DNA of 64,000 nt, from positions 1,364,001-1,428,000 of the forward strand of contig JBLDXI010000001.1 in NCBI GenBank assembly GCA_047495785.1. Direction: 5' to 3'. The DNA is from Lepidodermella squamata. Taxonomy: Eukaryota > Animalia > Gastrotricha. Shown here one piece after another: positions 1 through 64,000 of the stretch. Every line of letters begins with the position of its first letter. Position 1 is the stretch's first letter. The translations under genes were made by a program, and so were the position numbers. A model generated the notes under the pieces. The model was given only the letters and a program-made list of their open reading frames with translations, was not told where the DNA came from and did no database searches.

Positions 1-418
1 GCCGGCGACGACAACAACGACAAAAGCTGCAACGACTACTACTACTACAACCACAACTGCTGCGACTACGTCAAATGCGGCTGATTGGAACGCTTGGTTT
101 CCTGGCGTGTTTCAAATGCCGAATTTCGGCCTGCCCAATGTGCCCAGCCTGCCGATAACTTCCAGCCAAAAGTGCTCAGCCGCTATCCCTGACGCCGGCC
201 CATCGCCATGCACGTTGCCAACGAAATCGCGGTTTTATTTCGATTTCGCCAGGCAGCAATGCGTTGAACAACAATTGTGCCCCAAGTACGTCAACGGCGC
301 CTGGGACATTGGAGCGGATGATTTGAACAACTTCGACTCGAATGACCAATGCCTGGCTGAGTGCTTGCCGAGCGCTGTTAGTACAACCGCATCGGCACCC
401 ACAACTGTCAAAGCTTGA
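1..418 (+). CDS. 3' part of a Thr-rich mucin-like protein with a C-terminal Kunitz-like domain (5' end outside the window)
   Basis: Frame open from base 2: PATTTTTKAATTTT..., then CSAAIPDAGPSPC...RFYFDFARQQCVEQQLC...NNFDSNDQCLAEC (6 Cys, Kunitz-like FYFD and NNF-x4-C-x3-C). Stop at 418. Confidence 0.8.
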   Translation, partial: PATTTTTKAATTTTTTTTTAATTSNAADWNAWFPGVFQMPNFGLPNVPSLPITSSQKCSAAIPDAGPSPCTLPTKSRFYFDFARQQCVEQQLCPKYVNGAWDIGADDLNNFDSNDQCLAECLPSAVSTTASAPTTVKA

Positions 419-760
419 TGATTAATGTTCAGCTAAAAAAATCAAAAACCCAAAATATTGCCCTGTTCACTTCATTATTTTTCGCTATTTTTTTTGCAAC
501 ATCACATGTCGTTGAACCTGAGTAATAAATTTGTTGCGTTTAAATCGGCTATTTATTGTTTTCCAGCGCACTCAAATTTCTTGTGCTATAGGGCTATAAT
601 AAAAAATAACACCCATTTCGAAGGGTGGGAGTTGACACCACGTGAGTTGGCGCGATAAATAATTGCTTTGTTTACGCGCTCGGCTTTTAACGTCTCCACC
701 TTAAAAAATTAATTTCAGAACTTCTATTCTCAAAATTAAATAATACAATTTTTCTGGCGA

Positions 761-1564
761 ATGAGACTAGGGGATAGCGATTTTCGGACATTTATAGCCT
801 TAGCGCTATGCTTGTTTTTCAAGCTAAGCCTAGGCAATCCGTTGGCAGATGATCTGCCCGAATCGATCGATGACGATCTACCAGCGGCTTTGCCAGAGCC
901 TGTTGACGATGAACAGAAGTCGACTATGCCACCGATTGTAACACGCATAATTACGCCGAGGCCCGGAGCGAAGTTGCCTGATCACCTAAACGGCGCTATT
1001 GCGTTTTCGAATGGAACTATCAAGCTTAAAAACGGGACAATGTTCAATTTGCCAAAATGCAATAGAACTGTTGATGTCAACTGTACATCAGCTATGAATG
1101 CAACCGCTCACTTTTTTGGTTGGTTTTATTTTGAAGAAATTACCAAATTTATACCGAACTGTGAAAATTGTTTATTTGCCTATTTATGGTAGTTGATCTT
1201 AATTTAATTATTTTTTCAGGTTTACTTGGATTTGGCGGCGGACTGGGTGGTTGGGGCTTCCCAGGTTGGGGAGCAGGAGGAGGAGGAGGCTGGGGCGGTG
1301 GTTGGGGCAATGGAGCCAGTGCCGGCTACAACGGCGCAAGTGCAGGCAATACTTGGGGAAACAGCTATGCCGGTGGTTACGGCGGGTAAATTTTTTGAAA
1401 ATTTAACAAAATTTCAATCATAATTTCTCGGTTTTCCTTAATACAAGACCTGGCTGGGGTGGCGGCTGGGGCGGGTTTGTTTCAGGTTGACTGCATCGCA
1501 AATTCGAAATGTTTCATTTTATTTTTGCAGACCTGGCGGATGGGGAGGCGGTTTTCGGCGGTAA
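761..1564 (+). CDS. Secreted Gly/Trp-rich protein, paralogue of the 1942-3117 gene (multi-exon; 3' exon structure approximate)
   Basis: Hydrophobic signal, acidic Pro-rich segment, shared domain GAKLPDHLNGAIAFSNGTIKLKNGTMFNLPKCNRTVDVNCT, then a tttcag acceptor near 1220 into GLLGFGGGLGGWGFPGWGAGGGGGWGGGWG. Small downstream GGWGG exons. Confidence 0.7.
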
Positions 1565-1941
1565 TTTCAAAGCGACCTCATCTTCAGAGACTTGCCATAT
1601 AATAACCAGTCACCTCAAAAAACTCTTGATCACATGATCTATCTTGAATTATACTACGAATAATTAGTTCGTCATTCATTTTTTTGTCGGAAATACTGGA
1701 AAAATAAAAAATAATTCCGATCTCAATCCATTTTGATTTTTTGGAGGGCGATCGGTCGTTCTTTTTTCGAAAATTAGTTAATAAAAAAGAATGGCTTCAA
1801 ATTGTCGTAAATCAAGGTGTTAAACGTGGAATTCAGATGAGAGCGCGGCGTAATAAAATTTTATTGTTCTGACCGAAGCAGTGTAGTTGTTATATTGACT
1901 TGAAAACTAGCAATTAAAAATTGAAGAAATTTTTCGACCGC

Positions 1942-3117
1942 ATGGACGTTAACTATTTTCATGTCGCTGCATTGTTATTTCTCGCATCGTTAGCTTTTTG
2001 CTCCGATCTGCCTCCTGAGCTCCCGCCTGATGATTTACCACCGGAACTGCCGAAGATAACTCAGCCCGCTAGAATTACATCGAAGCCAACGCCAGCCAGC
2101 AACGAAGGGAGGACAATAAGCCCAAATCGAGGCGCGAGTTTGCCTCCGATACTTCAAGGCGCCTTGGTGTACTCGAACGGGACTCTCAAATTGAAAAACG
2201 GGACAATGATAAACATTCCGCGATGTAACGTCACGGTTGACAAGAACTGCACAGCAGCGGCTAATGCAGTTAACCAGCAGCTAGGGCTGGGTACGAACTT
2301 CGGAGGCTGGGGTGGAGGCGGCTGGCCTAGCTTTTTCGGTGGTGGCGGATTCCCTGGTTGGAACAACCCGAACTGGGGCGTACCTGCCGGGCCAGGCAGT
2401 TGGCTCGGCCCACCAGCTTACGGTTATTCCTTAGTCACTGTCACTTTTTCGACGCCAACAACCCCGAAACCTGTGCCGATTCAATGCCTTTACTCGAACA
2501 ACTACGCTGCCAGAGGCATTAATGCAGGTCTAGTGCCTGGCGGCTTGGGTGGCATAGCGCCGGGTGGGCCGGGTGCTTGGGGCGGATGGGGCGGCTGGGG
2601 TAATAACTACGGCTGCCAATATGGCAGTACTAACGCCTTCGTTTGGAGTGTCCCAGCTCAGAAATGCGTCTCTGTTACGGTTTGCAAGGTTCAGGGGTTC
2701 TACAGCTGGGGTGCCGAAGCCGGATTTGCGACTGAAGCTGATTGTAATCAGCTATGCGGAGGTAATTTCCAAAATTATTACTATGGTTTCCGGTAATTTT
2801 TTATTTTTTAGGTACGTCCGGTGGTAGTGCACCAGGTAAAAATTATCGAAACTTTCAGCCTTATTCGTTGTTTTAATTTTAATTTTAATTTATTTTTGTT
2901 CTACCTGAATTCAATGAATGAATTTATTTATGTATTATTAATTTAATTTTAATTTATTCGATTTTAATTTTGTTTTAAAATTTATGAATTTAATTTTTTA
3001 AATTTAAAATTCGCCTGGAATAATTATTTTTATTTTTTTACAGCACCAGCGAATGGCGGAAGTCCGGCACCCGCTCCTCCAGATTACAACGGCGGGGATC
3101 TGCCTCCTCCCTTGTAA
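1942..3117 (+). CDS. Secreted Gly/Trp-rich protein with a Kunitz-like domain
   Basis: ATG 1942, signal peptide, shared NGT-rich domain, GGWGG repeats, Kunitz-like C...C..AFVWSVPAQKCVSVTVC...FATEADCNQLC. Intron 2762-2811, 24-nt exon 2812-2835, intron to 3043, last exon ...DYNGGDLPPPL*. Confidence 0.8.
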
Positions 3118-3511
3118 TAATTAACGTTGACAATTTTTCAAGCATCATCAACAGCTCCATGAAATCGTCAGCCAGAACAAAAAACAAATGTAATAACACG
3201 TGTTAATAAAATATATAATCTCATTTGTCAACACTAATGGTTATTATTTTGTCAAATCTAAACATGAATCTATACACATCATCGCGCTTTCAGAAAAAAA
3301 CAAGAGGCATTACTGAAAATCATCTTATGAAAGCTTCTTTTAAAACGTGCGCCAAGATGTTCCGCATGAAATCCCGTCAAATTTTCTCATTTAACGCCGC
3401 AGTTAAATACTTTTTTTCGACGCTGCGATATCTCTCTCTGTGGCAAACTTTTTCAAGCAGCTACCAGTTTTCAGCTGTTAAATTTTCGAGAGAGTTCTGA
3501 GCTTCGAAAAA

Positions 3512-4090
3512 ATGGCTAAACTCTGCGCAAGTCTTGTCGTTTTACTGGCTTCGATTGTTTCCACTCAAGGTTTGGAATTTCTTTAAAAACATTTCAAATT
3601 AAAATGTCAAATGATAATAGCACAGAATCAGGAACTCGCGACAAATCTGCAAGGATTTATTGGGGATATCGTAAATCAAGCCTTCAAGCCGAACGCTGTC
3701 CAAATGCCAGCCCAAGTGCCCAGAGTTCCGCAACCTAGCGACTTTAACCAGAACCCGTTCAACCTGACGTTTTACAGGCCACAAGTTGTGGAAGTAGTCC
3801 AGCCGACACCACCCGATATTTCGAAGGATCCGTCTTTGAAATGCATGTTCCCAGGACTGAGCGCGAAGCCGTGCCCAGCGACGCGTGTCGAAGGCTGGGC
3901 GTGGAACCTCCTGGCGCAAAAATGCGAGCGCCGAACCTATTGCAACACGCCGTTGATTATCAATCAATATTTCGATGGCTTCATCACCGAGTACGAATGC
4001 AAAATAACTTGCGTGAAGACTACTACAGCACCAGCTACCACAGCTGCAGCTACTACAGCAGCCCCTACAACTGCCAAAGCTGGGAAATAA
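3512..4090 (+). CDS. Small secreted protein with a single Kunitz-like domain and Thr/Ala tail
   Basis: Exon 1 MAKLCASLVVLLASIVSTQ (signal), intron about 3570-3620, then CMFPGLSAKPC...WAWNLLAQKCERRTYC...FITEYECKITC. Confidence 0.8.
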
Positions 4091-4250
4091 TCAACCCATA
4101 GACTGATATGACTTTTTCGAGAATCCTGCCGATGATTTAATTTCAGAATAATTCATAACCCACATCATAAGTAAGATTTAAAAAATCACAGTACAGAGGT
4201 ATTTTTTGTTTTATTCCAATTATTAAGCTTATCGATATAAAATACGATAA

Positions 4251-7231
4251 TTAGTCGATAGCCGGCTTGTCTATAGGTACACTAGGCAGGCCTTCATCAT
4301 CAACGTCGACGAAGCTAGGAGCAGCGTCGCCGTGGCCATGCTGCATGAATACGTTGTTCCTACATAAATCATATAAATTTTTCAATATTTATTCTTTAAT
4401 GCATACCTATTCGGCCCGTAATTGCAGACGATAGTGAAATCCCATTCATTTCCAGGCGGTCTACAATGCGCCTTACCGCATCCAATGTATAGAATCTTGC
4501 CAAGTCGTGTGTTATCATCAGCTTTCGGCGGATCCGGCAGATCAGTAAAAAGCGATGTATCATTTATTTGAGCAAAAGCCGCCTTAATGTCAAGCCCCTC
4601 ATCGTCGGGCTTAGTCGATTTCCGTTGCCTAAGCGCCCATTCTGACACGCATTCTTTAATAGACTCGTCCCAACTTGCCCAGCAGATGTTCTGCCCGACG
4701 CCAGCAATTTCATCGAGGCCTAGGCTGGGTATTGTCCTTTGAACAACCTCGTCATGGCTTTCTAAACACTGACTCGCGTGCCGTTCCGCTGTTAGGGCAA
4801 GCTCTTCGTTCCAGACTAAAATCGGCAGATCAACCTCGTTTTGTTTAGATTTTCTCGCAACTGTTAGCCAGAGGTAGTGGAGTTTCAACGGCTCGTCGAC
4901 AGGAAACGGCACAGTATTTACAAGATATTTCGAATCATTTAAACAACTTGAGTGCTGTTTAGTGATCAAAACACCTGGTAAACAGTTTGGCTTAACAAAA
5001 TAAATTAGGGATTTTCACAAAAATTAGTCAAGAAACTTACCCCTCTCATTCCGCCACTTATCCTCAGAAGCGAGTGCTGATGGTGGTTAGTAGGATGGTA
5101 ATTAAGCGTCCAATTAGTGCCTAAACTAGCGGTTTTAATCCTCGAAGGGTTGTAGACTACATTAGACGTCCCGTTTGATAGCGGTTTATCTGTCGTAACT
5201 GGTAACGCTATCGAATTCTCGCGTTCGTAGAGACTAGTCTGAACGGCACTGTTCGAAAAATCAATCACCAGCGACGGGCCTTTATTCGATTGCATCGAGC
5301 TTGATTTCCGATTCGCTTTCGCATTAGCATCAGCAGAAAAGTAGCCCTTGAAATTTTCCATGGTAAGATTCACGAATGATTTCGGAGGCGGCATTGATGG
5401 TAGGAGTAATAAAGGCATTTGAGTTGTTGTAGTGGTGGAGGGCGTAGTTGGAGGGGTGGTGGTCGAAGTCGTGGTGGTCGTTGTTGTGGTGGTGGTCGTC
5501 GTCGGTGGTTCAGTTTTCGGAGTCGTTGTTGTAGTCGTCGTAGAAGTACTCGTAGTGCTTGTCATAGTAGTCGTCGTAGTACTCTGAGTAGTCGTGGTCG
5601 AAGTCGTGGTTGTCGGAGTGGTTGTGGTCGTCGTTGGTGTCGGAGTCGTGGTTGTACTAGTTGTAGTGGTTGTGGTAGTGGGCTGAGTCGTAACAGTTGT
5701 CTTCCTAGTTGTTGTAGTAGTTTTCCTCTTAGTCGTCGTAGTGGGTTCCGGGGTGGTTGTAGTCGTAGTTATCGGTTCGGGCTCTTGTTCCACCTCAATC
5801 TCAGGCTGCATCACTGGCACAGAGTCCATCGGATCCGGATCAGGTTCAAATACCGCCTCAGGCGTCGTCGAAGTTGTCCTAATCCGTTTCGGTCGTTCCG
5901 TGAAATAACTCTGAAAATGGCTGTAAGTAATCGGCTCCGGCCATCTAATGGTTGTCGTTCGATGCATAGCATGTGGCATGCAAATTTCGAGACATTCCTG
6001 CTTCGATGCGAAGCTGTTACGCTCGGCGAAATATTCCTGACTAAGCATGTACAGGCTTTTCTCGAGACAGTCGAAAAATACGTAACAACTCTGCCGTCTC
6101 GCGTCGAATTGCCACCGAATTTCTTCAAAAGTGCACTCCCGCTCTCTTTCCTGCGAAAATTGTTGTTGCCGTTGCTGCTGCTGCAGCTTCGTTTGATCAC
6201 GACATCGATTTTTCGAGGAAACGTTCGGTCGGTTTTGACGGTGGTTGTTGCTGCCGCTGCTACTACTACCGGCTGATTTGTAATGCTTCAGCTGTTCGAC
6301 GCATTTCGGCAGCCGTGGGACCCAGGTGCCATCGGCTGAACAGGTAACGGCAGCACTGCCGACCATTATCGTTCCATAAACGCATCGATACCACACGATA
6401 TCGCCATTTACAGAGTTCCGATCGCCGTCAAATGATGACTCATCAATAATTGCGTCTTCGACTACGGAAAGAAAACAAAAAATCGCTCATTTTAAAATTT
6501 TTATATTTTAATAATTCGAGAATAACAAATCCTCCTTAAAAAAATCAAATTATCTAATTAATTTTTAAAATTTAATTATAATTCATGAGAAATTAGGTCA
6601 AATTGACAGTTTTCCAGGTATTCTCTAGTGAGAAAATTATATTTAATTTTTTTATACCTATTGGCGCTGGTCCACATGATGCTTTTATGCTTGTTCTCGC
6701 ATTGTCATAAATATCGTCTATCAAGTCCCGCCTGCTTTCGATAGCGATTTCTGGTCCAAGTTCGGTTTCTCTCCCATGCTCTTCGTCACCTTCAGATTCA
6801 TTCACTTGCTCCGAAATGTCCCTCCCATCGTCAGAGCTCGTTTCCACTTTAAATTCAGACGCATAATCAGTTTGTTCGGGAGTCTCTTCCAAAGTTTCGT
6901 ACGCACTGATTGGCTTTTTGACGGATTTAGAGTAGTCGGAATATTCTGAAGTTCCAAGGCCCGACCCCCGAGAAGATGTGGGTGAATAGTTTTCTAGTTC
7001 AAAAAATATTCAATTTTGATTTACTTATTTTAATTGTTAATTATTACCTGCCGAATCCCACCGGTTGTATCTAGCAGCATAGGTGTATTGAAAATATTGA
7101 ATCGAAAGAGCAATAAAAATGATTTTATAAAATGTTGAATGACTGATAATCGAAGGCCGTAGCAGGCTGCTGGTACGATGCCGGATGCTGCTGTCGTGGG
7201 GTGAAAATTGAAAGACCAGTAGCTGCTTCAT
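4251..7231 (-). CDS. Acidic region-Sushi-Kunitz-like-mucin-degenerate CAP protein (about 5 exons)
   Basis: Sushi CGPAPI|VEDA...WYRCVYGTIMVGSAAVTCSADGTWVPRLPKC; Kunitz-like domain with polyQ insert; long poly-Thr stalk; SGGMRG|PNC; CAP motifs WNEELA..AERHA, GQNICW, IGCG, VCNYGP. HYTQ is replaced by AFAQ. Confidence 0.85.
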
Positions 7232-8136: not shown

Positions 8137-9714
8137 ATGGTTAGATTTGTGACTCTTACTGTCGCACTGCTCGGAATTTGCAATCAATTTACGAATGCGC
8201 AGAACACGAGCCTTTACGCGGCTGAGAGCGAGATTTGCGGGCCTTTGAGTCTCGTCGACGGCGCTGCGCCTCTTCACGTGCCTTATGCCATGGCGAATGA
8301 CTACGGCCCAGCGGCGCAGGGGTGCGAAAATCACGAGGAGTGCGTCATTTTCGCGTGCCATCCTGGACGAAATTTAGTGGGCAAATTTATCGTGAAATGC
8401 GATGTTATAAGGTGGGTTATTCTTTAAATTTAAATTATGAAAAATTAAATTGAATCGTCTAGCCGCCAGTGGAGCGAGTTGCCCCAGTGTGTCCTTACCA
8501 CCCTACCAACAACGCCTTCAACTACAACCAAAGCTGCAGACCCGTGCGAAGATTCGCCCAAGACCGAAAATGCGGGATGTTGGCGCAAAAAACAACGGTG
8601 GCACTACAGCAAGGAGATAAAGCGATGCATGTCCTTCTTGACATGCGCGCGGGGCCCGGAATTAGGTGGAGGTTCGCCGAATGTTTTCGCCTCGGAGCAA
8701 GAATGCATTATGACATGCGCCAGACCCGAGGGACTTCTCAGGCTAAATGCGACAACACCACTGCCTCACATCCATCCAATCGCTCTTCCTTCGTTATCAG
8801 CAGCGAAGAAGCTGAAACCTTTGCCGGCTGGTATGACTCGGATCATGGTTACACAAAATCCTAAATTTAACGGCCTGGGCGCGCCGTTGCCCATCAGAGC
8901 GCCTACAACGCCGCAAAAAGTTAAATATGGCGGTTTGCATGTCCCGACCCGAAAAACGGGCGTTGTGCCTCGCACTACGACAAAGGAAATAATTTCAACA
9001 ATTGACCCAAATATTGCCAGGAGGCTAACCGGTGGACTGAGGGGGGTAAGTTTTGGTCCAAAAAAAATAAATTATTTTCAATAAATTTTTCCAGCGTCAA
9101 TGTCTCAAAGGGGTCGATGTCGAAACCCACTCTAGCTGCTTGCCCGATTCGAAAAATCTCTTAGCAATCGAGCCAATCGATGCACGAGAGGTTTTAGGGT
9201 TCCACAACGCGATTCGAGGCAATGTAACCCCTCCGGCCAGATTTATGCCCGAACTTGCTTGGAATTTCGACCTAGCCACAACTGCCGAACGATTCGCCGC
9301 ATCATGCCCGTCGGAAATCGAAGACTCTCCCGAGGCGCGTGCCCTACCGCGGTGGAAAACTGTCGGGCAGAATGTGTGTCATTCAATACGAGGCGACATG
9401 TCTCTCGCCGAATGTATCCTTCGAATTTGGGGCAGTGAGGCCATGTATTGGAGTTATGGTGTTGGCGAGACGGACCCAGATGCAATTGTTGCCCATTACA
9501 CCCAAATGATATGGTCTGGGACCCTGTTCGTCGGATGCGGAGTGGCGCGATGCACCAACTCAACCTGGACAACAACCATCGTTTGTGAGTTATTTGAAAA
9601 TTTTTAAAATTTTCAGAACATTTTCAATTTTTTTCTATAGGTAACTACGCTCCGGCCGGAAATTTCGCAGGCCCAGGTAGAAATCCTTACGCTGAGCCGT
9701 ATGTGAGGCTATGA
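8137..9714 (+). CDS. Secreted Sushi-like-Kunitz-like-CAP protein
   Basis: Signal peptide; 6-Cys Sushi variant; Kunitz-like RWHYSKEIKRCMSFLTC...NVFASEQEC; TGGLRG|intron; CAP with HNAIR, GQNVC, AHYTQMIW, C|NYAPAGN. Confidence 0.9.
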
Positions 9715-12564: not shown

Positions 12565-13909
12565 ATGATAATTTTATTACTTCTTAGCGTTGTTTTCGAG
12601 GTAGTGTCAGCTTTTCATGGCCAACCTCTCTTGTACACAAGTTCGATCTGCGGGCCTATCTACGGCCTACCGCAGGCTGGGTTCGCTATTTACGGCAAAA
12701 GCGACCAGGACAACATAATCAAATCGATGGAGCCAGACTGCGGCCGTTCTGAATGCGTTGCTTTCAGCTGCTTCGGCAATTTTGTCCTTAACGGGCCTTC
12801 AGTCGTGAAATGCGACAGCGTCACCCGAAAATGGTCCACCTTCCCCTACTGCGACGTGCCTATGGAAGATTTCTGCTACGACAAAAGCCCGAGTGACGAT
12901 CCGAGTTACAAATGCTGGAAGAAACGCCAGCGTTGGCGCTACCAGGCATCGTCTGGGCGATGCGTTCAAATTCAAACTTGCCTCAGATCACCAGCCCTAG
13001 GCGGTACGACGATGAATTTGTTTCTAACACAGGAGCAATGCCGTGATACTTGCAGTGCCGAGGCTATTAGAAGGCGAACAGGAACGACGCCGCGGCCGGT
13101 TTTCAAAACCTCGAGATTGGCGCCGATTGTTGACAATCACGACTTTGACGGCACGGGTAACGCTACAACGCAAGGTTATACGGCCGATCAGTATCCTATG
13201 GATTACTACGAGGTCGGGGACGATTTTTTCACTACCCCTCAACCTGGAGCGACTACAACAATGAGGGTGAGTAATCATTTTAATTGATAAAAATTAAATA
13301 AAAAATTCATTTAATTCCAGGGCGCGCTCGATATGAAGAACGAGGTTCTAACAGCTCATAACAAATGGCGAAGGACAGTTTCGCCCAGAGCTCATAGACC
13401 CTTAGTCGACCTGCAATGGGACGACGATCTCGCCGCTGATGCTCAAAGGTAAGATCAATTTTTTTTTCAATTTTTTTCAATTTTATTTCCTATTTTTTCA
13501 GTTATGCCGCTGCTTGTCCAGAAGTTGAGCAACCTATTGCATCGCGATCGGTGGCTAAATACCCGTCAATCGGGCAAAACATGGCCTACTCGTTGTGGGA
13601 AGACCAAACCTGGACGAATGTTACCGATTTTTGGGCCGATGAGCGGAACAACTGGAAATACGGCGTCGGCGCCGTCGAAGTTTTCTACGACGTCGAACAT
13701 TACACGCAAATTATTGCCGCCGCAAGTCAATTTGTTGGGTAATTTTCGAAAAGAAAATAACGCGAAATTTTTTTATTTCAATTTATTTTAGATGCGCGAA
13801 GGTAAAGTGCACATCTCCACCCGCGAAATGGCTCTACACTTGGGTTTGCAACTACGCCCCGGCTGGAGGGCCAGATTCTCAAGCTTTCCCATACGCTGCT
13901 GGAGTTTAA
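12565..13909 (+). CDS. Secreted Sushi-like-Kunitz-like-CAP protein
   Basis: Signal MIILLLLSVVFEVVSA; ICGP...DCGRSECVAFSC...VKCD...WSTFPYC; RWRYQASSGRCVQIQTC; CAP exons AHNKWR, GQNMA, EHYTQII, WVCNYAP. Confidence 0.9.
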
Positions 13910-50548: not shown

Positions 50549-51856
50549 CTAATTTCTCTCGTACGGCTTCGAGAAAGGATTGAAATTGTTTGATTGAGAG
50601 CCAACGTTGCCTGAAGGGGCGTAATTACAGACCTAAACCAGAACAAAAACAGAAGCAAGTAATGAAAGAATCAGAATAATAGAACTAACCAAATATCTGT
50701 TCAAACCGGATCCGCCACATGTTGCCCTTCCACATCTGAATAAAATTTGAAAAGCAGGACGCTCAGGAAGCCCTTGATTAATCATATTAAAACGTACCCG
50801 ATGTATTTTGTACCTACAATGAAAGGTGAAAAAGTTTACTTGAGCTCTGAAGTGATCATGACTTACCTGCCCAAATGACTTGAGTGTAGTGGCCCACTGG
50901 CTGGTCATTTTTAGCTCCTGTGCCATATTCCCAGTCTTTCTTTTCATCCGCCCATGACGTTATGCATTCCGTCCATGGCTGATCAAAACTCGCGAAGCAC
51001 ATATTCTGCCCGATCATTCCGAAGCCTGGCTTCTCTTGAATGCCTCGGTTGTCGTTGTCATCGTGATTCTGGGAGCACTGGGCGGCCCAACTGATTGAAA
51101 AAAATTAGCCTCAAGAAAAATAATCGAGAGGACATCATACTTAGCTGCGCCACGCGCAAGGTCATCATCCCATTGCAAGTCAGGGATTGCTGTTTTTGCT
51201 GGAGGATCGACACTTTCTAAAACATCTCAAGCTTTACATTTTAGTGAACTATTTGAACTCCTCACTCCTCCATTTGGAATGCTCGTTAATTATCTCTTTG
51301 ATTATATCAGCTGTGACAGCAGGCACACTTGCACCTCGCTTGTAGGCAAGGCACATGGAATGTGGAGGTTGCAAACCATAGGGACAGTTCTAATCAACAA
51401 ATCGAATGAAATGAACAATTCGATAAAGTTCTATCTTACAGTAGCCGGCGACTGAGCTGGGCTCGAATTTGTGGGCTTTGGCCCTGGCTGTGGCGCTGGA
51501 ATGTCATCGACTTGTTCCTTCGTTGTATCAGGCTGAGGTTCTGGTGCAGGGGCAGGGTTGCTTGATGAGCAAGTAGGAGCCGGCGAGCTCCACTTTTTGC
51601 CCTTAGCCGTTAATTTGGCAGCACAAATTATTTCAGCAGTTGGTGTAGGCGCCGACCCATCCATGCAAGCATAGGTTACTGTAGCCTTGTAATTACTTCC
51701 CTCCACCTCACTCGACATTCCTGCAACGTAGCCACCCGCGACATTCGGTGGATCTCCGCAAGGCTTCGGATCATCATCGCCATCCTGCGCAACATTTGGC
51801 TGGATGAGGAATGTGCCAAATGCTAAAGCCAAGGTCAGTAAAAGCTCTCCTCTCAT
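50549..51856 (-). CDS. Secreted Sushi-CAP protein
   Basis: Signal; CGDPP..YACMDG..IC..WSSPAPTC; HSMCL; GQNMCF, GHYTQVIW, 16-nt micro-exon (GTKYIG), VCNYAPSGN; ends PYERN*. Confidence 0.87.
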
Positions 51857-52419: not shown

Positions 52420-54052
52420 TTAAAAAGATGAGATCCACTGGCTAAAATCAATTGTGAAAACATTGGGCTAATTCGAGCGGTAGTTTGGTTTAATTGAACC
52501 TGTTTCGGAGAAACTCATAGAATTTGCGGCGGCGATTTCGTAGGCTTTGTGGCGGCGACGGCAGGTTGCACGGACTTCCACCCGCGGCTTGTGCTTGAGA
52601 GCATGGTGAATTGGGGGCAGGCTGAGTTAGTTGTGCTGGTTGGGCTCGAGAGCAAGGTGACGGCTGGGTGTTGGAGTCTGAAGCCTGCGAGGCCGCTCGA
52701 CTGCAAGGCGATTGATCTACTGGGCTCGGATCTGGGGGAGGCGGCGTTTGCGCGTTGTTGTTCGCAGCTTGACGGAGGCTGCACGGCGATGGAGGTTGAG
52801 TGGGGTCAGCCACTTGCGACGCAGCAGCAGAACATGGCGATTGCACTGGAGGCGGGGGCTGTGTAGGTGGCAGATTTGTCAGTGCTTGCAGCAAAGAGCA
52901 TGGAGATGGGGTCCGGGGACCACTCGGGCCGCTTACTCCACAAGGGCGAGAAACAGGCCGCGGCGGAAGAGCTGGAGCTAGATTCGCGATATTTGGAGGC
53001 GTAGTCCTAGGACGAGCCGAGGTGGCAGCAATTGGCTGTGGTGGGGGTTGAGTTGGTGCGACTTGAGCCTGGTTACAAGGTGTCGGAGGGGAAGTTGGAC
53101 TAGCCTGGTTGTTGCAAGGCGACAGCTGCCGTGGTGGGACTTGCACTGGAGGAAGAACAGCAGGCGGTGGCAATGCGGGTTGAGCTATCGGTTGTTGATT
53201 ACTGCATGGATTCGCTGGTAAAGCTTGATCAGCGGCTTGTTGTGCGCCGCATGGCGAAGGCTGCTGCGGCGGAAGTTGCATTGGGGGCAGAACAGCAGGC
53301 GGCCAAGCTGGCTGAGCTACTGGCTGCTGGGCTCCACATGGATTTGGCGGTAAGTTTTGGTTTAGCGGCAGTTGGGGTCCTCCACATGGCGACGGCTGAG
53401 GCAAAGGCGGTAATTGAGACAAGACCGCGGAAAGATCAGGCAGTTGATTGTTGCAAGGTGAGGGCAAGGCGGGATTACTGGCCGCTTGCTGGCCACACGG
53501 TGACTGGAGTGGCAATTGAGGTGGAAGAACAGGGGCCGGCGCAGCTTGTTGGGGTGAACCGCAAGGAGCAGACGCAACGTCATTTCTCGAGCATGGCTGC
53601 ATTCCAAGTTGGCTAGGCAGCATTGGGGGTGGATTCATCATGGGGAAAGTGGGAGGCGGTTGTTGGCCAGCGCATGGCGATGACACAGCGTTTCCGCAGG
53701 GTGATGATGCAGGGGGCTGCCAATCGCCGGAGTTCACGTCGGCTATTCTCCGCCCAGAGACATTCGGCAGGGGCGCGGGTGGAGCTCCATTGCAAGTTGG
53801 GAATGTTTCAGTGTCCCAGACGCCATTCTGACAGCTGGCGCGAGCGGGTCCGCTGAGTTGGCCGCCATTTGCACAGTAGAACAGAACCCGTCGCGTGAAA
53901 ACCAGATTACCACTGTCGTCGTAGCGGAAATTCGAAGACATCCAGTTAGCACTTGCTGCATTAGGTCCAGTCGGTACAGGGCATCTAAGGTCTTGGCCAT
54001 TTACCGCAGCGATGAATAAACCAACCATAGTGACAGCCACAAAACGCGCCAT
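52420..54052 (-). CDS. Secreted Sushi + Pro/Gln-rich protein with about 20 xPC motifs (putative disulfide-crosslinked structural protein)
   Basis: Signal; Sushi CPVP...FYCANGGQLSGPARASCQNGVWD..FPTC; repeated SPC[GNS]. A probable short last exon (SQWISSF*) follows an intron at about 52442-52499. Confidence 0.85.
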
Positions 54053-54466
54053 TTTAGTAGCGAAAAAATGAAAATGATCTCAGCTTCAGCGGCATTAAAT
54101 ACCGCTGAGCACCTAACGAGCCGTGCTCTATGCAAATATTGGCTCGACATAAAGCCCGATGCGAAGCTGTGTTGCAAACAGTTTACCAAAACACTCGCTC
54201 GTTCACCAAGTCAACAATAACAAATTAGAAACAGAGATACTCTGAACTGTATTCTCTGCATCAACAACTTTATCTCGCCGTTAACTAGAAAATCTGGGTC
54301 TTGCAGTGCAAAAAAATGACATGCACCAACAATTTTCAAGTGCGATACGAATTCACAAAAATTGTTTTATTCAAAATATTCTTCGTTCATCTGAATCTGC
54401 TATTAATAGTCAAGGTTAAAATGGATCGTGAAAGTACAAGTCTCAGTCTTTGAAATAATTTATTTT

Positions 54467-55984
54467 TCAACCACGTTGACAAGGTGAAGGAGCAGCATTA
54501 GGGGAAGCGGGAGATCCGCATGGCGAAGCGACAGGGGGAGCCATTGGTGGCGGAGGAGGAGGCGGCATCATTGGTGGTGGTGCCGGTCGATTGCATGGCG
54601 ATGGTGGCGCATTCGGAGATGGTGGGGATCCACATGGTGACTGCATTGGCGGCATAACACGCGGAGGTGGTGGGGGCTGAGTAATAGGAAAAGCATGGTA
54701 TAGAAATATCGTCAAAGAAGTGACTCGAAGATCCAACTCACCGGTGGCATCATTGGAGGTGGTGCCGGACGATTGCATGGAGATGGTGGCGCATCAGGAG
54801 TTGACGGGGACCCGCAGGGTGACTGCATTGGCGGCATAACACGCGGAGGTGGTGGGGGCTAAACAATTGAACAAATATTGGCATAAATAGTCTCAACAAA
54901 GAAGTGGCACGGATTATAAAAAAGTTATATTTGAGATTCAACTCACCGGTGGCATCATTGGAGGTGGCGCCGGTCGATTACATGGAGATGGCGGCGCATC
55001 AGGGGCAGGCGGGGATCCGCAGGGAGACTGCATTGGCGGCATAACACGCGGAGGCGGTGGGGGCTGAATAATTGATAAAAAACAGTTGAAAATTAGGAGT
55101 CATCGCGATGAAGGCGCTCGGAATATAGCTAATGTCACTGGGGCCAACTCACTGGGGGCATCATAGGTGGTGGCGCCGGTCGGTTGCATGGTGATGTCGG
55201 CGCATCAGGAGTCGGTGGGGATCCACAGGGTGACTGCATTGGCGGCATAACACGCGGAGGTGGCGGGGGCTGAATAATAGGAAAAGCATATAAAAGCTCA
55301 AGTCTCATGGAAGAAGGGAGTAGGTAGATAGCAATAGCCATATGCAAGTCAACTCACCGGAGGCATCATTGGCGGTGGCGCCGGTCGATTACATGGAGAT
55401 GGCGGCGCATCAGCAGTCGGCGGGGAGAAGCATGGCGATGCCACTGGCGCACGGGCAGGTGGAGGCTAAAAGATTGCAAGAAATATATCGAGTATTACCA
55501 GTCGTGACATTGAGCTTACTGGAGGCATCATTGGCGGCGGGGGTGGCGCTTGCCCACAAGGAGAACTCGGAGGTTGTCCGCATGGTGAGCTGGCGGGTGG
55601 ATTCCATTGAGGAGGTTGATTCCATTGAGGAGGTTGGTTCCATTGTGGAGGTTGATTCCATTGAGGAGGTTGACTTGCTGGGGGATTCATCATCGGTGGG
55701 CGTGGAGCGGCAGCACCGCAAGTTGGGAAATTGTTTGTGTCCCATTTGCCATTCTCACAATTGGCGGAAGCCTGGCCACTCAAAGCACCGCCATTAGCGC
55801 AGAAGAAGAGAACTTTCCTTGTGAAGATCAGCTTCCCGCTGTCGTCGTAACGGAAGTAGGCCGACTGCCAGTTGGCTTGAGCTGCATTTGCGTTTGTCGG
55901 CATAGCGCAGAACATGTCGGTTGTCTGAGAAACGGCTGCGAGAATACATGAAGATAAAACGGCCGCCTTCACGAGAACAGCCAT
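54467..55984 (-). CDS. Secreted Sushi + QPPQWN repeats + exon-encoded Pro/Met/SPC repeats; paralogue of 52420-54052
   Basis: Closely similar Sushi (FRYDDSG.L.FTR.VLF.CANGG). Phase-0 exons 55465-55358, 55269-55153, 55063-54947, 54858-54742 and 54676-54467. Confidence 0.87.
54560..55465 (-). repeat. Tandem exon+intron duplication units (about 180-210 bp; 117-nt exons)
   Basis: Repeated PPPPPRVMPPMQSPCGSP..PDAP.SPCNRPAPPPMMPP exons, each followed by a gtgagttg donor. Confidence 0.85.
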
Positions 55985-56426: not shown

Positions 56427-58468
56427 TCAATTAATAGCATAAGGCCTAGCGTAAGGATCGGATCCGTTTGTTCCAACGTTTCCACCGGGAGCGTAGTCAC
56501 AGACCTTAAGCAATATTCAAATAGCATTGCTGATTAATCTCAAGATTTCGAGACCTACCAAAACATATTCTACTGAAGCATTTCTGCAACGCGTTTTGCC
56601 ACAGCCGACGAAAAAGGTGTCACCCCATACCAATCTGTGAAGTGAAATGGTGCGAAAATCTGATATAGTTTGATTCGAAGTCCTTACTGAGTATAATGGC
56701 CGATTTGACCTTTTCCTACTTGTCCTGAACCATAGCGCCAATCTTTAATGAAAGTTCATATACCAGGTATTTTGATAACAAAAGTGAAGTTGTCCAGTTT
56801 ACCTTTTCGCTCTGCAGCCCAGCTGTTGATACATTCCGTCCAAGACATTGAATAACCCCAAGAGTAGCAAATATTCTGCCCAACCCAGTCGTAAGCAGAA
56901 CCTCTCGCGCCACGCAATGGTAATGCACGATTTTCTCCACGGTCGTGTCCCATCACGCATTGTGCCGCCCAGCGCTCAGCCATTGTGGCTAAGTCATCGT
57001 CCCATTGAAGCTGAGGCAAAGGAAAGTTAGCAGGAGGTGATACTCGACCTTAATAGCAATAGAATAAGTTGCCTGTGAAAACTATAACAACATTTACTTC
57101 TCCAATAGTTATGCCGTGATATGATTTCAGCAGGCGGGCTACGTTCATAGCCTAAAAAGTTCGTTGAATCATTCAAGCACATAGCGTGAGGAGCTTTCAG
57201 GTTGTATCGACATTTTGGCTGTAAGGAAGCTTTAAATGCCTATAAACGCATTCGATCTCAGAAGGACTCACCCCTCTTGGAGGAAGAGTAACCGGAGGTC
57301 CACCGCCTGAGCTGCTAAGGTAAAATCCACTTCCCGAGAAGGAGTCACCGCTTGCCTCATCTTCCGCGGATTCGTTATCTGGCTCGTCCGAGTTAGCTAT
57401 TTTGTAAGGTTGAGCATACGCATTTTGACCATTCAAAGCCAAGTTTCCACCAGGGCCATAATTGCAGATCTAGGATTCATTCACTTCGAGGGTAACTACT
57501 AGTGTTTATTGGACTTACAAGAATATGCCGAAGTCCTTCGCATTTGACCCTACCACATCCAACAAATAGCGTGTCTTGCCAAACTAGTCTAAAAATAGTA
57601 TTTAAAATGATTAGCTTTAGTTTAAATATCTCACTGAGTGTAGTGGCCGACTATTCCAGTTCCTAATTGCCCAGTGCCGTATCTCCAGTCCTTCCGTTCT
57701 TCGGCCCATTTATCGATAGCCGCAGTCCAGTTCGGTGCTGTAAAACCCCAACCGATATACATATTTTGACCTACCTTTATAACAATGCCATAATGAGTTC
57801 TGAGCATTTAATAACAAGAAACGAACCCAAGACCACGCTGGCCGATTCGGTGGCCGCTCTGGAATTTCTCTGGCAGATGTGGGGGTATGTTCCAGCGAAC
57901 ATTGAGCAGCCCATCGCTCAGCTATCAAAGCCAAGTCTTCGTCCCATCTCAATTTTGGCAAGGGTCGTCTTGATGGGGGCGACAGGTTTTCTCGCCAGTA
58001 GTTATGTCTGAGCAGGATTTCGCTCTGAGAACTAGGCTCTATCGCTTCAAGAGCAGGTGAATTCGGCAAACATATAGCGTGGCTTTGCGGCAGACCATAT
58101 TTGCAGTCGTACTAAAATATTGGAAAAATAGGCATTCCAGTTTCAGCTTAGATAAATGAAGTTACTGTTTGAGTGAAAGCGGGGCGAGGCGTACGAGGCG
58201 ATGATGTAGCAGCTAAACTGCAAATTGGCAACGGGTCCATCCATATTCCGTTGACACAGTTGACAATTCCGCTCCCGATCAGAGTCCCACGGAGGCAGAT
58301 GTAGGTAAATTTTATTGACCTCGATAATACTGTGTTATTTGGCAGCGTTCTGGTAGAAATCTGCTGCGAGGCTATGAAACCGCCCGCAACATCGGGTGGA
58401 TTATCACACGGGGCAGCTGCTATGAATGTCAGTGAGATCAAGTTTAAAAGTAAGCGAGGCTTAATCAT
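56427..58468 (-). CDS. Secreted Sushi protein with two tandem CAP domains
   Basis: Signal MIKPRLLLNLISLTFIAA; CDNPP...YICLRG..IVNCVNGIW..PIC; two CAPs (RHNYWR, WAAQC, GHYTQ, CNYGP/CDYAP) joined by ...LPPRG|PKC. Confidence 0.85.
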
Positions 58469-61900: not shown

Positions 61901-63538
61901 GATGTATAAGGACAGCGAATCATTCTATTTTTTGCTTTAGCCCTCCAATATAATCAGGCTTACCTCCCTCAAAATACACCACTGTTCAACTATTATCAGG
62001 TATCCTTGTATCGAATCACAGTAGAATGTAAGGATAGCCTGCACTTGACATCGGCAACATCAACCACAACAATTACGGTAGGTATTCGATGAATCAAGTT
62101 GGCAACTCTAGCGGGAATTTTTATCAAGGTGTCTATAAGCCATGTCAACCAGCCAGCTCAGTTCACCTCCTTACCTGGATATGTAAATGTCCAAGAAGAC
62201 GCAACCACTGGTCCTACAGAGCTGTACTCCATCGCGGCTGTTGATCCTAACAATGGCGTTAATCCTGTCACAATGAGCCTCTTGTCAATTTCACCATCCG
62301 GTGGTGGGTCCAAGTTTTACTTCGACACTAATACCAAGAGTGAGTTTATTGATTTAAAGTTTACGGGACTTACAATAATTTTTCAACCAGTATTCGGCTA
62401 CACCGCAAATCCTCAATTCAGTTTCAATACCCAGTCCAATTACACGGCCTTGTTCTCTGCGTACAATAATGTGAATCCGACGGTGACTGGAACTCTTTAC
62501 ATCTCAGTATCGAAGGTCACCCCTGGGGTATCTTGCTGCTACACAGTTTCGATCCGAGAAGATACGAATACCTCTCAAACTCTGTGGGACATGAGAACTC
62601 GTAACAGCAGTGCTAACATTGTAGCGTGGGGTCTCGGCACTGTAAGTCCCTCGAGCTCGGCGTTCAGCATAACCACAGCAGGGCGTGAGTTTATTCTAAC
62701 TTGAACAGAAATCCAATTTCGTGTCGATTATTTTTCAGTTGTCAAGTCTAGCAGTTATCCCAACTTCAACTATAACACAGCCCCAGTTTACACCGTGTTG
62801 ATTACTGCGAGAGATGCCACGACCACTATTGCGACTTACACCCTAACGGTTTCAATCACTCCTGTGACCCAACAGCCTGTTATTTGGAACATGCCTCAAA
62901 CAGTGACAATTTTACAAGGCACTGGTGGCGGAGCGAATCTGCTTCAAGTCAATTGCACGGAACCGAGAAGCTCGCTCAGTTACAGTATGAAAGTTCTACC
63001 TAGCTCTGGAACGACAAATTTCCTCATTTCGACTACTGGTCTTGTAACAACGCCATCCTACGCGAATTTCACTTACGTCACCAACCCGATTTATTACGTC
63101 ATAGTCGGATGTTCCAACACGGCTTACACGACTAGCGGAACCCTCACTGTAGTGATCACCACCCCGACTATTACTTACACTGTTACTACGACACCTTCTT
63201 ACGGCCAGACAAGCACAGCCACAGGGAGCAGTGGAAGTAGTACAACAACTTCCAGCAGCTCAGGACTCGCTCCTGAATGTGAGTGGACTAAACCTATAGT
63301 TTATTGCATTGACCCGAAATATTTCCCCAGATATCGGAGCGATAGTTGGCAGTATTGGAGGATGTCTAATTTTAGCAGGAATCGCATATGCTGTTGCGAA
63401 GCACCTTCAAGCCAAGGCAGCTGCTAAAGGAATAACAAGGTACGTATACAGTTGCATCTCGAATGGTTGAAAACAAAATTTATTTGCTTTCATTTCAGTA
63501 TGATGAAACAATACCCGCCGCCATACAGCGTACGGTGA
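58939..63538 (+). CDS. Single-pass cadherin-repeat protein (non-classical, cadherin-related) with short PPPY cytoplasmic tail
   Basis: Signal MSFLGILSMLVI|VAVI; repeated cadherin motifs (VTDPD, ATDGG, DRDND, DRESD, N..P.F.[NS][LM]P..V.V.E[ND]); Ser/Thr stalk; TM YIGAIVGSIGGCLILAGIAYAVA; tail ...MMKQYPPPYSVR*. Confidence 0.85.
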
Positions 63539-63684
63539 CCTTCTTTATTTGCGATGGCAGATCTATGACTGAAGCCCCATTTTTGTGTTTACTGGGGAGA
63601 AAAAGTGCAAAATAATTTTTCACACACCCAGTGTAACTTTGTTGCGAGTAAATAAAGATATTTGTTCAACAAAATGAAGATCCT

Positions 63685-64000
63685 TTACTCAATGGCGTAA
63701 GGTGTTGCATATGGATTGGCGCCTGCGTTACCAGCCGGACCATAGTTGCATACCTGAAGAGGAGTTAATAAGATGAATCAGTAATGCTCTAAATCAGTCT
63801 TACTAGAACAATATTTCCATCACCCAGTCCATTGCAGTAACTTTCGCCGCAACTGAAAAAATTATTGCCCGTGAAAAGAGAAACATCTCAACCAAAAAGC
63901 TTACCCTACAAACTTTGTCTCTTGCCAAATCATTTGAGTGTAATGCCCTATGCTGATGTTGGACGTTTTACCGACGCCATACTTCCAGTAGAGGCGTTCA
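63685..64000 (-). CDS. 3' end of a further CAP-domain gene (continues beyond the window)
   Basis: ERLYWKYGVG...GHYTQMIWQETKFVG|CGESYC...|VCNYGPAGNAGANPYATPYAIE*. Confidence 0.88.

What the first reader, a model, noticed from the sequence alone, without database searches (positions are those of the whole stretch)
1..64000. Cluster of about 22 genes encoding a combinatorial Sushi/Kunitz-like/mucin/CAP secretory toolkit
Seen: 14 CAP genes (18 CAP domains) and 8 CAP-less relatives reuse the same modules in many combinations (S-K-CAP, S-K-mucin-CAP, S-K-CAPx3, S-CAPx2, S-CAP, S-mucin, Kx4, GW-K, S-SPC). The cluster runs off both window ends. Known: CAP expansions occur in venoms, parasite secretions and reproductive fluids, usually as CAP-only, double-CAP, or CAP with C-terminal add-ons. 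I do not know of an N-terminal Sushi + Kunitz-like + mucin + C-terminal CAP architecture as a described family. Inference: a lineage-specific, co-regulated gland secretion system (adhesive, cocoon/egg coat, mucus, venom or seminal) with structural and effector members.
Basis: partly seen in the sequence, partly recalled or inferred. Interest (0 to 1): 0.85.

Follow-up and report, generated by a model that had tools for sequence, protein, structure and literature searches.

The report
Sushi-Kunitz-mucin-CAP secreted gene cluster
A small invertebrate genome carries about 22 neighbouring genes for secreted proteins assembled from four known modules (Sushi, an unusual Kunitz, mucin stalk, CAP) in a combination I found described nowhere; what the proteins do is untested.

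Summary
"S" is a true Sushi/CCP module. "K" is a true but divergent Kunitz/BPTI module with altered cysteine spacing. CAP is a canonical CRISP/antigen-5-type PR-1 domain.

In all 13 junctions I could locate, the CAP cassette is preceded directly by a phase-0 intron.

The family is real and old:
- A profile search of 1.84 billion proteins listed three full-length S-K matches in its best 150, and all three carry a CAP domain.
- All three come from unnamed eukaryotic contigs in ENA metagenomes. One contig keeps the local gene order G8/G9/G10.
- Synonymous sites between the two species are saturated, but protein identity is 48-69%.
- No named protein and no paper with this architecture was found.

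- The window's CAPs are not one clade. They mix with other CAP loci of the same genome on C17, C13, C66 and C54.
- Unrelated genes sit inside the cluster.
- No shared upstream motif was found.

Earlier scan notes report related Sushi-mucin families elsewhere in this genome.

Verdict: a new variant of a known kind, of moderate interest.

The parts
107..418 (+). G0: exon carrying a K (Kunitz-like) module. Its signal-peptide exon lies about 400 nt before the window.
   Evidence: K profile hit at 164-370. Pfam Kunitz E=1.4e-3. Signal-peptide exon at L003 9597-9725.
761..1561 (+). G1: signal peptide, a small 2-Cys domain shared with G2, and a Gly/Trp-rich low-complexity part. No K module was detected and the 3' end is uncertain.
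   Evidence: ORFs and model.
1942..2796 (+). G2: signal peptide, a Gly/Trp-rich part and a C-terminal K module (GW-K).
   Evidence: Single ORF. K hit at 2605-2760.
3512..4090 (+). G3: signal peptide, a K module and a Thr/Ala-rich tail.
   Evidence: ORFs. K hit at 3839-4018.
4382..7009 (-). G4: S (split by an intron), K, a long Thr-rich mucin stretch and CAP. The CAP is degenerate: the HNxxR and GHYTQ motifs are lost. The 5' exon is not resolved.
   Evidence: Pfam CAP and Sushi. ORFs. CAP profile positions 2-177, E=2.5e-61.
8137..9607 (+). G5: S, a Thr-rich stretch, K, a linker and CAP.
   Evidence: Pfam Kunitz 23.5 bits (over the cut-off) and CAP 52.6 bits. Exon 1 with signal peptide and Sushi. 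A G5-like relative, P0141, is 65-69% identical in the CAP module.
12565..13909 (+). G6: S-K-CAP, 395 aa, 4 exons.
   Evidence: Model. A G6-like relative is P0021.
14101..15309 (+). G7: S-K-CAP.
   Evidence: Model. One in-frame intron is probably left unspliced in my model.
15658..17462 (+). G8: S-K-mucin-CAP, 546 aa.
   Evidence: Introns read by eye and model. A G8-like relative is P0052.
17578..18447 (-). G9: signal peptide, S and a Thr-rich mucin stretch, with no CAP.
   Evidence: Single ORF. Sushi hit.
18648..21116 (-). G10: a degenerate S, a long mucin stretch and CAP, with a 441-nt phase-0 intron before the CAP cassette.
21832..23460 (-). G11: signal peptide and four K modules separated by Thr-rich and acidic repeats (Kx4).
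   Evidence: Single 542-aa ORF. Four K hits.
24244..25764 (-). G12: S-K-mucin-CAP.
   Evidence: Pfam Kunitz. Models. Last exon with the CNY motif.
26155..29830 (-). G13: S-K-CAP-CAP-mucin-CAP as one gene.
   Evidence: Pfam Sushi 24.8 bits and CAP 63.5 bits. Models. The CAP2 tail and the mucin stretch share one exon. No signal-peptide start lies between the CAPs. Each cassette is preceded by a phase-0 intron.
43284..44874 (-). G15: S, a Pro/Glu-rich linker and CAP.
45343..47564 (-). G16: S-CAP, a Pro-rich linker and a second CAP. The two CAPs are sister copies.
   Evidence: Pfam Sushi 21.3 bits. Model. Tree support 97/71.
48803..50277 (-). G17: a GW-rich N-terminus, S, mucin and CAP.
50549..51856 (-). 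G18: S-CAP.
52490..54052 (-). G19: S plus a long Pro/Gln-rich region with recurrent 'SPC' cysteine motifs.
   Evidence: Single ORF. Pfam Sushi E=3e-3. Sushi profile hit.
54371..55984 (-). G20: S plus about 40-aa Pro-rich repeats, each with paired Cys. The repeats are spread over several short exons.
56427..58468 (-). G21: S-CAP-CAP.
   Evidence: Model. On the tree its CAPs group with the C17 cluster.
63691..64000 (-). G22: the 3' part of an S-CAP gene. Its Sushi module and the 5' half of the CAP lie beyond the window's right end.
   Evidence: L002 3-414 for CAP, 797-997 for Sushi.
30185..31901 (-). G14: a neighbour, not a family member. It has CUB, a Thr-rich stretch and a trypsin-like serine protease with an intact His/Asp/Ser triad and Asp189.
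   Evidence: Pfam Trypsin 1.9e-34 and CUB 7.8e-5. Last exon read directly.

Best explanation
The window holds most of a loose, roughly 68-kb neighbourhood of genes for secreted, non-membrane 'beads-on-a-string' glycoproteins. The family is restricted to this animal's lineage.

A typical member has five parts, in this order:
- a signal peptide;
- one N-terminal Sushi/CCP module;
- often a divergent Kunitz module;
- often a Thr-rich stalk, presumably O-glycosylated;
- one to three C-terminal CAP domains of the CRISP/antigen-5 type.

The array grew mainly by whole-gene duplication. It also grew by duplication or transfer of a CAP cassette, which is preceded directly by a phase-0 intron in each of the 13 junctions located (shown). 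The genes are old and under purifying selection (shown).

The function is inferred, not shown. I think the proteins are components of an extracellular secretion or surface coat, such as mucus, egg or body coat, or adhesive. In that picture Sushi and Kunitz act as binding or anchoring modules (Kunitz possibly as a protease inhibitor). The mucin stalk acts as a hydrated spacer. CAP is the exposed ligand-binding or protective head, binding sterol, lipid or cations as in other PR-1-type proteins. The low-complexity relatives (S-mucin, GW-rich, Pro/Cys-rich) would supply matrix.

The confidence given covers the whole statement. The structural and evolutionary part alone I would put at about 0.85, and the functional part at about 0.35.
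For: Module identity:
- The Sushi profile hits only complement-control proteins in the PDB.
- The K profile hits only Kunitz chains. The K model's 50 listed Foldseek matches, the best of them, are all Kunitz, TM 0.53-0.75.
- The CAP profile hits CRISPs, Sol i 3, GLIPR1 and Ves v 5 down to 8e-37, and the fold search agrees.

Layout:
- The full-length model of relative P0141 shows three folded parts separated by disordered Thr-rich stretches.

Secretion:
- Signal-peptide-like starts are found at nearly all the genes.
- I saw no hydrophobic C-terminal segment in the translated models; this was judged by eye, with no predictor run.

Cassette structure:
- GT follows the last linker codon directly and AG precedes the CAP module in all 13 junctions located.
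- First-exon lengths are multiples of 3.

Age and constraint:
- Relatives P0021, P0052 and P0141 keep S-K-CAP.
- pS is 0.82-0.88 (saturated) against pN 0.23-0.39.
- The G8/G9/G10 order is kept in L028.

Restriction to the lineage.

Expression, circumstantial only:
- Three small public runs (22-213 million letters) hold 32-76% of the sampled words of window 24300-30000.
- I estimate the exon share of that stretch at about 0.73.
- This fits transcripts better than low-coverage DNA. It was not verified.
Against: There is no direct expression, tissue or proteomic evidence.

No shared upstream motif was found.

The window's CAPs are not a clade of their own, and unrelated genes are interspersed. 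The neighbourhood may therefore not be a functional unit.

In the related species the G5- and G6-like genes sit among unrelated genes.

The CAP 'tetrad' is incomplete. Gln replaces the first Glu in the modules I read, the first His is missing in G5-G7 and G10, and G4's CAP is degenerate. This comes from direct reading of the sequences, and the mapping of positions rests on my own knowledge.

The Kunitz loops and the residue after the second Cys vary (W, S, K, F, N, E, T, P). Classical protease inhibition is therefore not assured.
Confidence: 0.5

Rival explanations
1. Humoral defence toolkit. The proteins are soluble immune effectors. Sushi acts as a recognition module, as in complement regulators. 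Kunitz blocks microbial or parasite proteases. CAP acts like plant or yeast PR-1 by sequestering sterols or lipids.
For: The CAP modules are PR-1/CRISP/antigen-5 type. Sushi is greatly expanded genome-wide, with 645 first-look candidates, as expected for a diversified recognition family. Branches on the CAP tree are long and the copies numerous.
Against: Relatives in another species show purifying selection rather than obvious arms-race turnover. The long mucin stalks and the structural low-complexity relatives (GW-rich, Pro/Cys-rich) fit a matrix better than soluble effectors. No induction data exist.
Confidence: 0.2
2. Reproductive secretion. The proteins are components of seminal fluid, an egg coat or gamete recognition. 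This would parallel CRISPs, Kunitz inhibitors, CUB proteins and trypsin-like proteases in the seminal fluids of other animals.
For: A CUB-trypsin gene with an intact catalytic triad lies inside the cluster, next to G13. CAP plus protease inhibitor plus protease is a classic seminal mixture (my own knowledge).
Against: The protease is not found next to the relatives' genes. No sex- or stage-specific data exist. Conservation is fairly high for reproductive proteins.
Confidence: 0.12
3. Not a system at all. The window is a chance neighbourhood of several independent tandem arrays of one very large, genome-wide family of Sushi-headed secreted proteins, with no common regulation or common product.
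For: The CAP tree needs 6 changes for the label 'window'. G21 groups with C17 and G6-G8 with C54. Other S/K/CAP loci occur on C13 and C17. Sushi arrays occur on many contigs. Unrelated housekeeping genes are interspersed. No shared motif was found.
Against: The 14 best matches of the K profile in the genome all lie inside the window. This subtype is therefore largely concentrated here, although the profile was built from these same modules. Local order G8/G9/G10 is conserved in a distant relative.
Confidence: 0.25

Closest known systems
CAP superfamily (CRISP / antigen 5 / PR-1; Pfam PF00188), especially insect venom antigen-5 proteins (Ves v 5, Sol i 3) and snake CRISPs
   Same: The domain and fold are the same, and the signature motifs (HNxxR, GQN, GHYTQxxW, CNYxPxGN) are present in most modules. 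The Cys-containing N-terminal extension aligns with Sol i 3 and Ves v 5. The proteins are secreted.
   Different: There is no CRISP hinge/ICR domain, LCCL domain or membrane anchor. Instead there are N-terminal Sushi, Kunitz and mucin modules and up to three CAPs per chain. I found no named protein with this layout.
Nematode double-CAP ASP/VAL proteins (e.g. Na-ASP-1)
   Same: Tandem CAP domains occur in one secreted chain (G13, G16, G21), and the family is large and clustered.
   Different: The CAP repeats here arose within this lineage: the two G16 CAPs are sisters. They follow a Sushi head. The match to Na-ASP-1 is weaker than to CRISPs (1.2e-20 against 8e-37).
Kunitz/BPTI domains of multidomain extracellular proteins (bikunin, boophilin, TFPI, collagen VI alpha3 C5)
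   Same: There are six cysteines, the fold is the same and the 'RYxY...C' core is present.
   Different: The cysteine spacing is C-x10/12-C-x15-C-x5-C-x17/19-C-x3-C, against 8/15/7/12/3 in BPTI. The region between the 4th and 5th Cys is about 5 residues longer. The presumed P1 residue varies. Only G5 passes Pfam's cut-off.
Sushi plus Ser/Thr-rich stalk proteins such as decay-accelerating factor (CD55)
   Same: Sushi module(s) are followed by an O-glycosylated stalk (one search lists DAF among the matches).
   Different: There is one Sushi, not four, no GPI anchor, and the stalk carries a CAP head.

Membership tests
CAP superfamily (PF00188) | Match to the family profile above the curated cut-off | tested here: met
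   Scores of 22-63 bits against a cut-off of 21.1 on single exons. Thirteen six-frame hits inside the window. P0021, P0052 and P0141 score 35-49 bits.
CAP superfamily (PF00188) | Alpha-beta-alpha sandwich fold | tested here: met
   The CAP part of the P0141 model has block-mean pLDDT of 73-92. The 44 Foldseek hits at E<=1e-3 are all CAP proteins, with TM by target 0.29-0.78.
CAP superfamily (PF00188) | Signature motifs CAP1-CAP4 | tested here: met
   Read directly in the models. They are present in the modules I read, apart from G4, which has lost CAP1 and CAP3. The motif definitions come from my own knowledge.
CRISP subfamily | C-terminal hinge plus ion-channel-regulatory (Crisp) domain | tested here: not met
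   The chains end 10-25 residues after the CNY motif. No Crisp domain appears in the Pfam scans.
Kunitz/BPTI (PF00014) | Six-Cys pattern and Kunitz fold | tested here: met
   Cys pattern. The profile hits only Kunitz chains in the rows shown (60 of 115). The AF2 model has pLDDT 75 and the 50 Foldseek matches listed are all Kunitz.
Kunitz/BPTI (PF00014) | Pfam gathering score and canonical loop lengths | tested here: inconclusive
   Only G5 is over the cut-off (23.5 against 21). G12 scores 19.4 and G0 19.2, and the others gave no hit. The spacing differs from BPTI.
Kunitz/BPTI (PF00014) | Serine-protease inhibition | not testable with these tools
   The residue after the second Cys varies among modules.
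Sushi/CCP (PF00084) | Four-Cys, one-Trp module matching CCP profiles | tested here: met
   Pfam scores are over the cut-off for G13 (24.8) and G16 (21.3) and just below for the others. The window profile hits complement receptors and factor H at 5e-93 to 1e-9. G5-G8 carry an extra Cys pair and G10 is degenerate.
Mucin-type stalk | Long Thr/Ser/Pro-rich low-complexity stretch in a secreted protein | tested here: met
   Thr runs of roughly 60-150 residues in G4, G8, G9, G10, G13 and G17. They are disordered in the model. O-glycosylation itself is not testable here.

The most novel reading that the evidence does not exclude
The N-terminal Sushi may be a common 'address' module of a lineage-wide display system. 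In this view hundreds of Sushi-headed secreted proteins dock to one shared matrix or surface partner. New combinations would be made by phase-0 cassette shuffling. The cluster in this window would be the CAP arm of that system.
Probability: 0.15. Interest if true: 0.7.

Novelty: new variant of a known kind. Interest (0 to 1): 0.45.

Why it matters
CAP/PR-1 proteins are everywhere: in venoms, parasite secretions, seminal fluid and plant defence. Their molecular roles are still poorly understood, and their known partners are mostly C-terminal add-ons.

This family is conserved and under selection. Its CAP domain sits at the end of a Sushi-Kunitz-mucin scaffold, sometimes in three copies. That offers a natural case of CAP domains being displayed and multimerised.

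The family also documents cassette-type domain shuffling in a little-studied, compact animal genome.

If the proteins prove to be the main components of a secretion (glue, coat or mucus), they would be candidates for new biomaterial or anti-fouling studies. Without expression data this remains a well-described gene family with an inferred role.

Tried and rejected
Reads: the look-up of sequencing runs listed three coded runs. From then on I sent no reference covering those bases to any search tool and worked beside them. They lie in a predicted intron of G13.

Word-index protein searches: searches with the G6 S-K exon and with the G5 CAP exon found nothing. The search with P0141 found only itself and generic CAP proteins at 31-36% identity.

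JGI metagenome scan: the scan used a G5/P0141 CAP alignment. It returned generic CAP genes, many on contigs with 60-75% G+C that are presumably bacterial. None had S or K next to it. A first attempt with the S-K alignment was rejected because it had no conserved stretch.

Co-regulation: k-mer enrichment in the 200 nt upstream of 20 genes gave only TATAATA (6 of 20, p=3e-5 before correction for 16,384 words), which is not significant.

Taxon:
- No COX1 was found in the assembly.
- No nematode SL1 RNA was found, though that control rang nowhere.
- An Atlas look-up of the PMCA fragment was uninformative.
- Other agents' guess of 'probably a rotifer' was not checked.
- My own idea of an appendicularian was dropped for lack of any support. 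The Oikopleura house paper, judged from its term counts only, mentions Sushi 4 times and Kunitz not at all.

Papers: five full-text searches found no paper describing a Sushi+Kunitz+CAP protein.

Complex prediction of a K module with the neighbouring protease was not run. The protease is split over exons, so it has no single reference, and I make no binding claim.

My first splice models over-extended 3' ends and inserted micro-exons. These were corrected with profile guidance and by direct reading.


Full report
**What the window is.** The window is G000:C1:1364001-1428000 of a 121-Mb, 151-contig assembly. It has about 44% G+C and is densely packed with genes. The introns I could verify are GT-AG and mostly 50-60 nt long. 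Other agents of this scan think the animal is probably a rotifer. I could not check this: the assembly has no COX1 and an SL1 search was uninformative.

**Checking the observation.**
- I built a CAP profile from the window's own single-exon CAP domains and ran it over all stop-to-stop ORFs. It finds 18 CAP modules, nearly all covering the full profile across 1-5 exons.
- Pfam CAP is above its cut-off on the exons tested and in the six-frame genome search.
- I modelled the genes with a small dynamic-programming splicer, using splice matrices trained on the window and a bonus for profile-supported codons. I corrected ends and junctions by direct reading.
The parts list gives them one by one.
- The multi-CAP genes are supported by ORF continuity. 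In G13 the tail of CAP2 and the mucin stretch lie in one exon. In G16 the tail of CAP1 and the Pro-rich linker lie in one exon. No signal-peptide-like start lies between the CAPs.
- All models lack RNA support, and a few still retain an in-frame intron.

**Identity of the modules.**
- S: a 14-sequence alignment (A3) used as a profile against the PDB hits complement receptors, factor H, beta2-glycoprotein I, DAF and similar proteins, and nothing else among the rows shown (5e-93 to 1e-9). S is a Sushi/CCP module. G5-G8 carry an extra cysteine pair and G10 is degenerate.
- K: a 14-sequence alignment (A2) hits Kunitz/BPTI chains and nothing else in the 60 rows shown of 115 matches (best 6.9e-7).
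- An AlphaFold model of the G6 module has pLDDT 75. Its 50 listed Foldseek matches, the best of them, are all Kunitz, with probability 1.00 and TM by target 0.33-0.75.
- K is nevertheless a distinct subtype. Its spacing is C-x10/12-C-x15-C-x5-C-x17/19-C-x3-C, whereas BPTI has 8/15/7/12/3 (my own knowledge). The residue after the second Cys, the P1 position in BPTI, varies: W, S, K, F, N, E, T or P.
- CAP: a profile of nine single-exon modules (A5) hits snake CRISPs (8e-37), fire-ant Sol i 3, GLIPR1, Ves v 5, hookworm ASPs, PR-1 and Pry1. Sol i 3 aligns from profile position 3. The Cys-bearing N-terminal extension (GGxRG-PxC...H-S/T-S/A-C) is therefore of the antigen-5 type.
- There is no Crisp/ICR domain. 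The chains stop 10-25 residues after the CNY motif.
- The full-length model of relative P0141 shows folded Sushi, Kunitz and CAP parts joined by disordered Thr-rich stretches. Its fold matches are CAP proteins.

**A cassette structure.**
- At all 13 junctions I could locate, the last codon of the linker is followed directly by GT. That codon often ends a GG-x-R/S/I-G motif. The CAP module starts directly or within about one codon after an AG.
- The first exons, which carry the signal peptide, S, optionally K and optionally mucin, are multiples of three in length. So a phase-0 intron always precedes the CAP cassette.
- Most of these introns are 50-64 nt. Three are longer: 441 nt in G10, and 240 and 252 nt in G13.
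- The first CAP cassette of G13 sums to 663 nt, so it is symmetric.
- This is what exon or cassette shuffling predicts. The two CAPs of G16 are sister copies (97/71), which indicates an internal duplication.

**How the window relates to the rest of the genome.**
- The 14 best genome-wide matches of the K profile, which was built from the window's own modules, are the window's 14 modules. All other K hits are much weaker.
- CAP is different. The genome has at least 73 six-frame CAP hits.
- There is a second S-CAP(xN) cluster on C17 and a K-K-S-S-K-CAP gene on C13. C66 and C54 carry tandem arrays of CAP modules with no S or K hit beside them.
- I built a maximum-likelihood tree of 51 CAP modules. 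It puts 48 of them, including all 18 from the window, in one clade (100/100) against three distant CAPs.
- Within that clade the window's modules are not monophyletic (6 changes). G15-G18 form a clade (94/96). G6-G8 sit with C54, G21 with C17, and G22 with the right flank.
- Terminal branches are long, with a median of 0.42.
- Sushi is massively expanded genome-wide, with 645 first-look candidates and 147 of the 150 scored at E<=1e-4 on many contigs. This agrees with earlier scan notes on Sushi-mucin-ankyrin and Sushi-Kunitz families elsewhere in this genome.

**Extent of the cluster.**
- On the left, only G0's signal-peptide exon lies outside the window, and a GPCR gene follows.
- On the right, the rest of G22 plus two CAP modules reach about 3.2 kb beyond the end.
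- Weaker K hits lie 7-8 kb to the left and 17-19 kb to the right.
- Unrelated genes sit inside the cluster. One is a Cdc25-like phosphatase (HCEFSSQRGP motif, my own reading). The others are a CUB-trypsin with a full catalytic triad and Asp189, a ZIP transporter, a PMCA pump and a large repeat gene with no Pfam match.

**Outside this genome.**
- A profile of five S-K segments (A4) was run against 1.84 billion representative proteins. The best 150 are mostly multi-Sushi proteins.
- Three rows match the S-K profile in a single stretch, two of them end to end and P0141 from position 37 on. They are P0021 (365 aa, G6-like), P0052 (412 aa, G8-like) and P0141 (451 aa, G5-like).
- All three have a Pfam CAP domain behind the S-K part.
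- They occur only in ENA metagenome assemblies and carry no names.
- Their contigs are eukaryotic, with 38-39% G+C, and have few or no introns in these genes.
- L028 keeps the local order: a G8-like gene on the plus strand, then a G9-like Sushi and a G10-like CAP on the minus strand.
- The G5-like and G6-like genes lie among unrelated genes (C2-domain, PUF, RabGAP and guanylate cyclase genes).
- Between the two species, synonymous sites are saturated (pS 0.82-0.88) while pN is 0.23-0.39 and protein identity is 48-69%. This points to old genes under purifying selection.
- Limit: the list of 150 ends at 82 bits, so weaker S-K-CAP relatives could be hidden below it.
- Nothing named was found by the word-index search. 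No ESM Atlas cluster of 50 or more members resembles the layout, the best being CRISPLD2 at 0.79. The JGI scan gave only generic CAP genes, many on contigs with 60-75% G+C. Five full-text literature searches found no such fusion.

**Function.**
- Nothing here shows function.
- The sequences say the proteins are secreted, modular, heavily O-glycosylatable and conserved. They are accompanied by matrix-like low-complexity relatives: an S-mucin protein, GW-rich proteins, proteins with Pro/Cys-rich 'SPC' repeats, and a four-Kunitz protein.
- My best reading is a secreted coat, mucus or adhesive-type material with CAP heads. A defence role and a reproductive role are the live rivals. Whether the neighbourhood is a functional unit at all is a real question.
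- The CAP metal-binding positions are only partly kept. Gln replaces the first Glu in the modules I read, as I recall for wasp antigen 5. The first His is missing in G5-G7 and G10, and G4 is degenerate.
- I found no shared promoter motif.
- The only hint of expression is indirect. Three very small public runs hold 32-76% of the sampled words of window 24300-30000, close to the exon share I estimate at about 0.73.

**Verdict.**
- The architecture is, as far as I could search, undescribed and restricted to this lineage.
- All its parts are known domains and the biological role is untested.
- It is a new variant of a known kind, of moderate interest.

Noticed in passing
window 30185-31901 (-): A CUB, Thr-rich and trypsin-like serine protease gene lies directly next to the S-K-CAPx3 gene. 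It has an intact His/Asp/Ser triad and Asp189. It is a possible target or partner of the Kunitz modules, but nothing links them beyond position.
   Followed up: partly
L006 (G000:C13:3789000-3794500), minus strand 1670-3540: A gene elsewhere in the genome has the order K-K-S-S-K-CAP. So Sushi, Kunitz and CAP are also combined in another order outside the cluster.
   Followed up: partly
L009-L011 (G000:C17:1863500-1888000): A second cluster holds Sushi-headed multi-CAP genes (for example S-CAPx3) with at least 11 CAP modules. The CAPs of G21 group with it on the tree.
   Followed up: partly
G000 genome-wide: The Sushi module is hugely expanded: 645 first-look candidates and 147 strong hits, in arrays on C3, C15, C19, C55, C151, C13 and C9. 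Contigs C25 and C26 give near-identical hit patterns, so they may be haplotigs or a large duplication.
   Followed up: no
L025 1070-2425; L026 4369-5466; L028 5826-7064: In the related species from ENA metagenomes, the G5-like gene is intronless and the others have fewer introns than here. The phase-0 intron before the CAP cassette was therefore gained in one lineage or lost in the other.
   Followed up: partly
window 59698-63427 (+): A large multi-exon gene has repeated modules of about 100 aa rich in Asn-x-Ser/Thr sites and ends in a Ser/Thr-rich tail. The two ORFs tested have no Pfam match. It may be an uncharacterised adhesion-type repeat protein.
   Followed up: no
window 9917-10423 (-): The last exon of a Cdc25-like phosphatase (HCEFSSQRGP active-site motif) sits between G5 and G6. 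Pfam gave no hit at E<=0.01 on this exon alone.
   Followed up: no
window 33364-41231 (-): A ZIP zinc transporter and a plasma-membrane Ca2+-ATPase (PMCA) split the cluster into two halves. An earlier scan note reports an unusual C-terminal tail in this genome's PMCAs.
   Followed up: no
It lies in a predicted 240-nt intron of G13. I did not inspect it or send it to any search tool.
   Followed up: no
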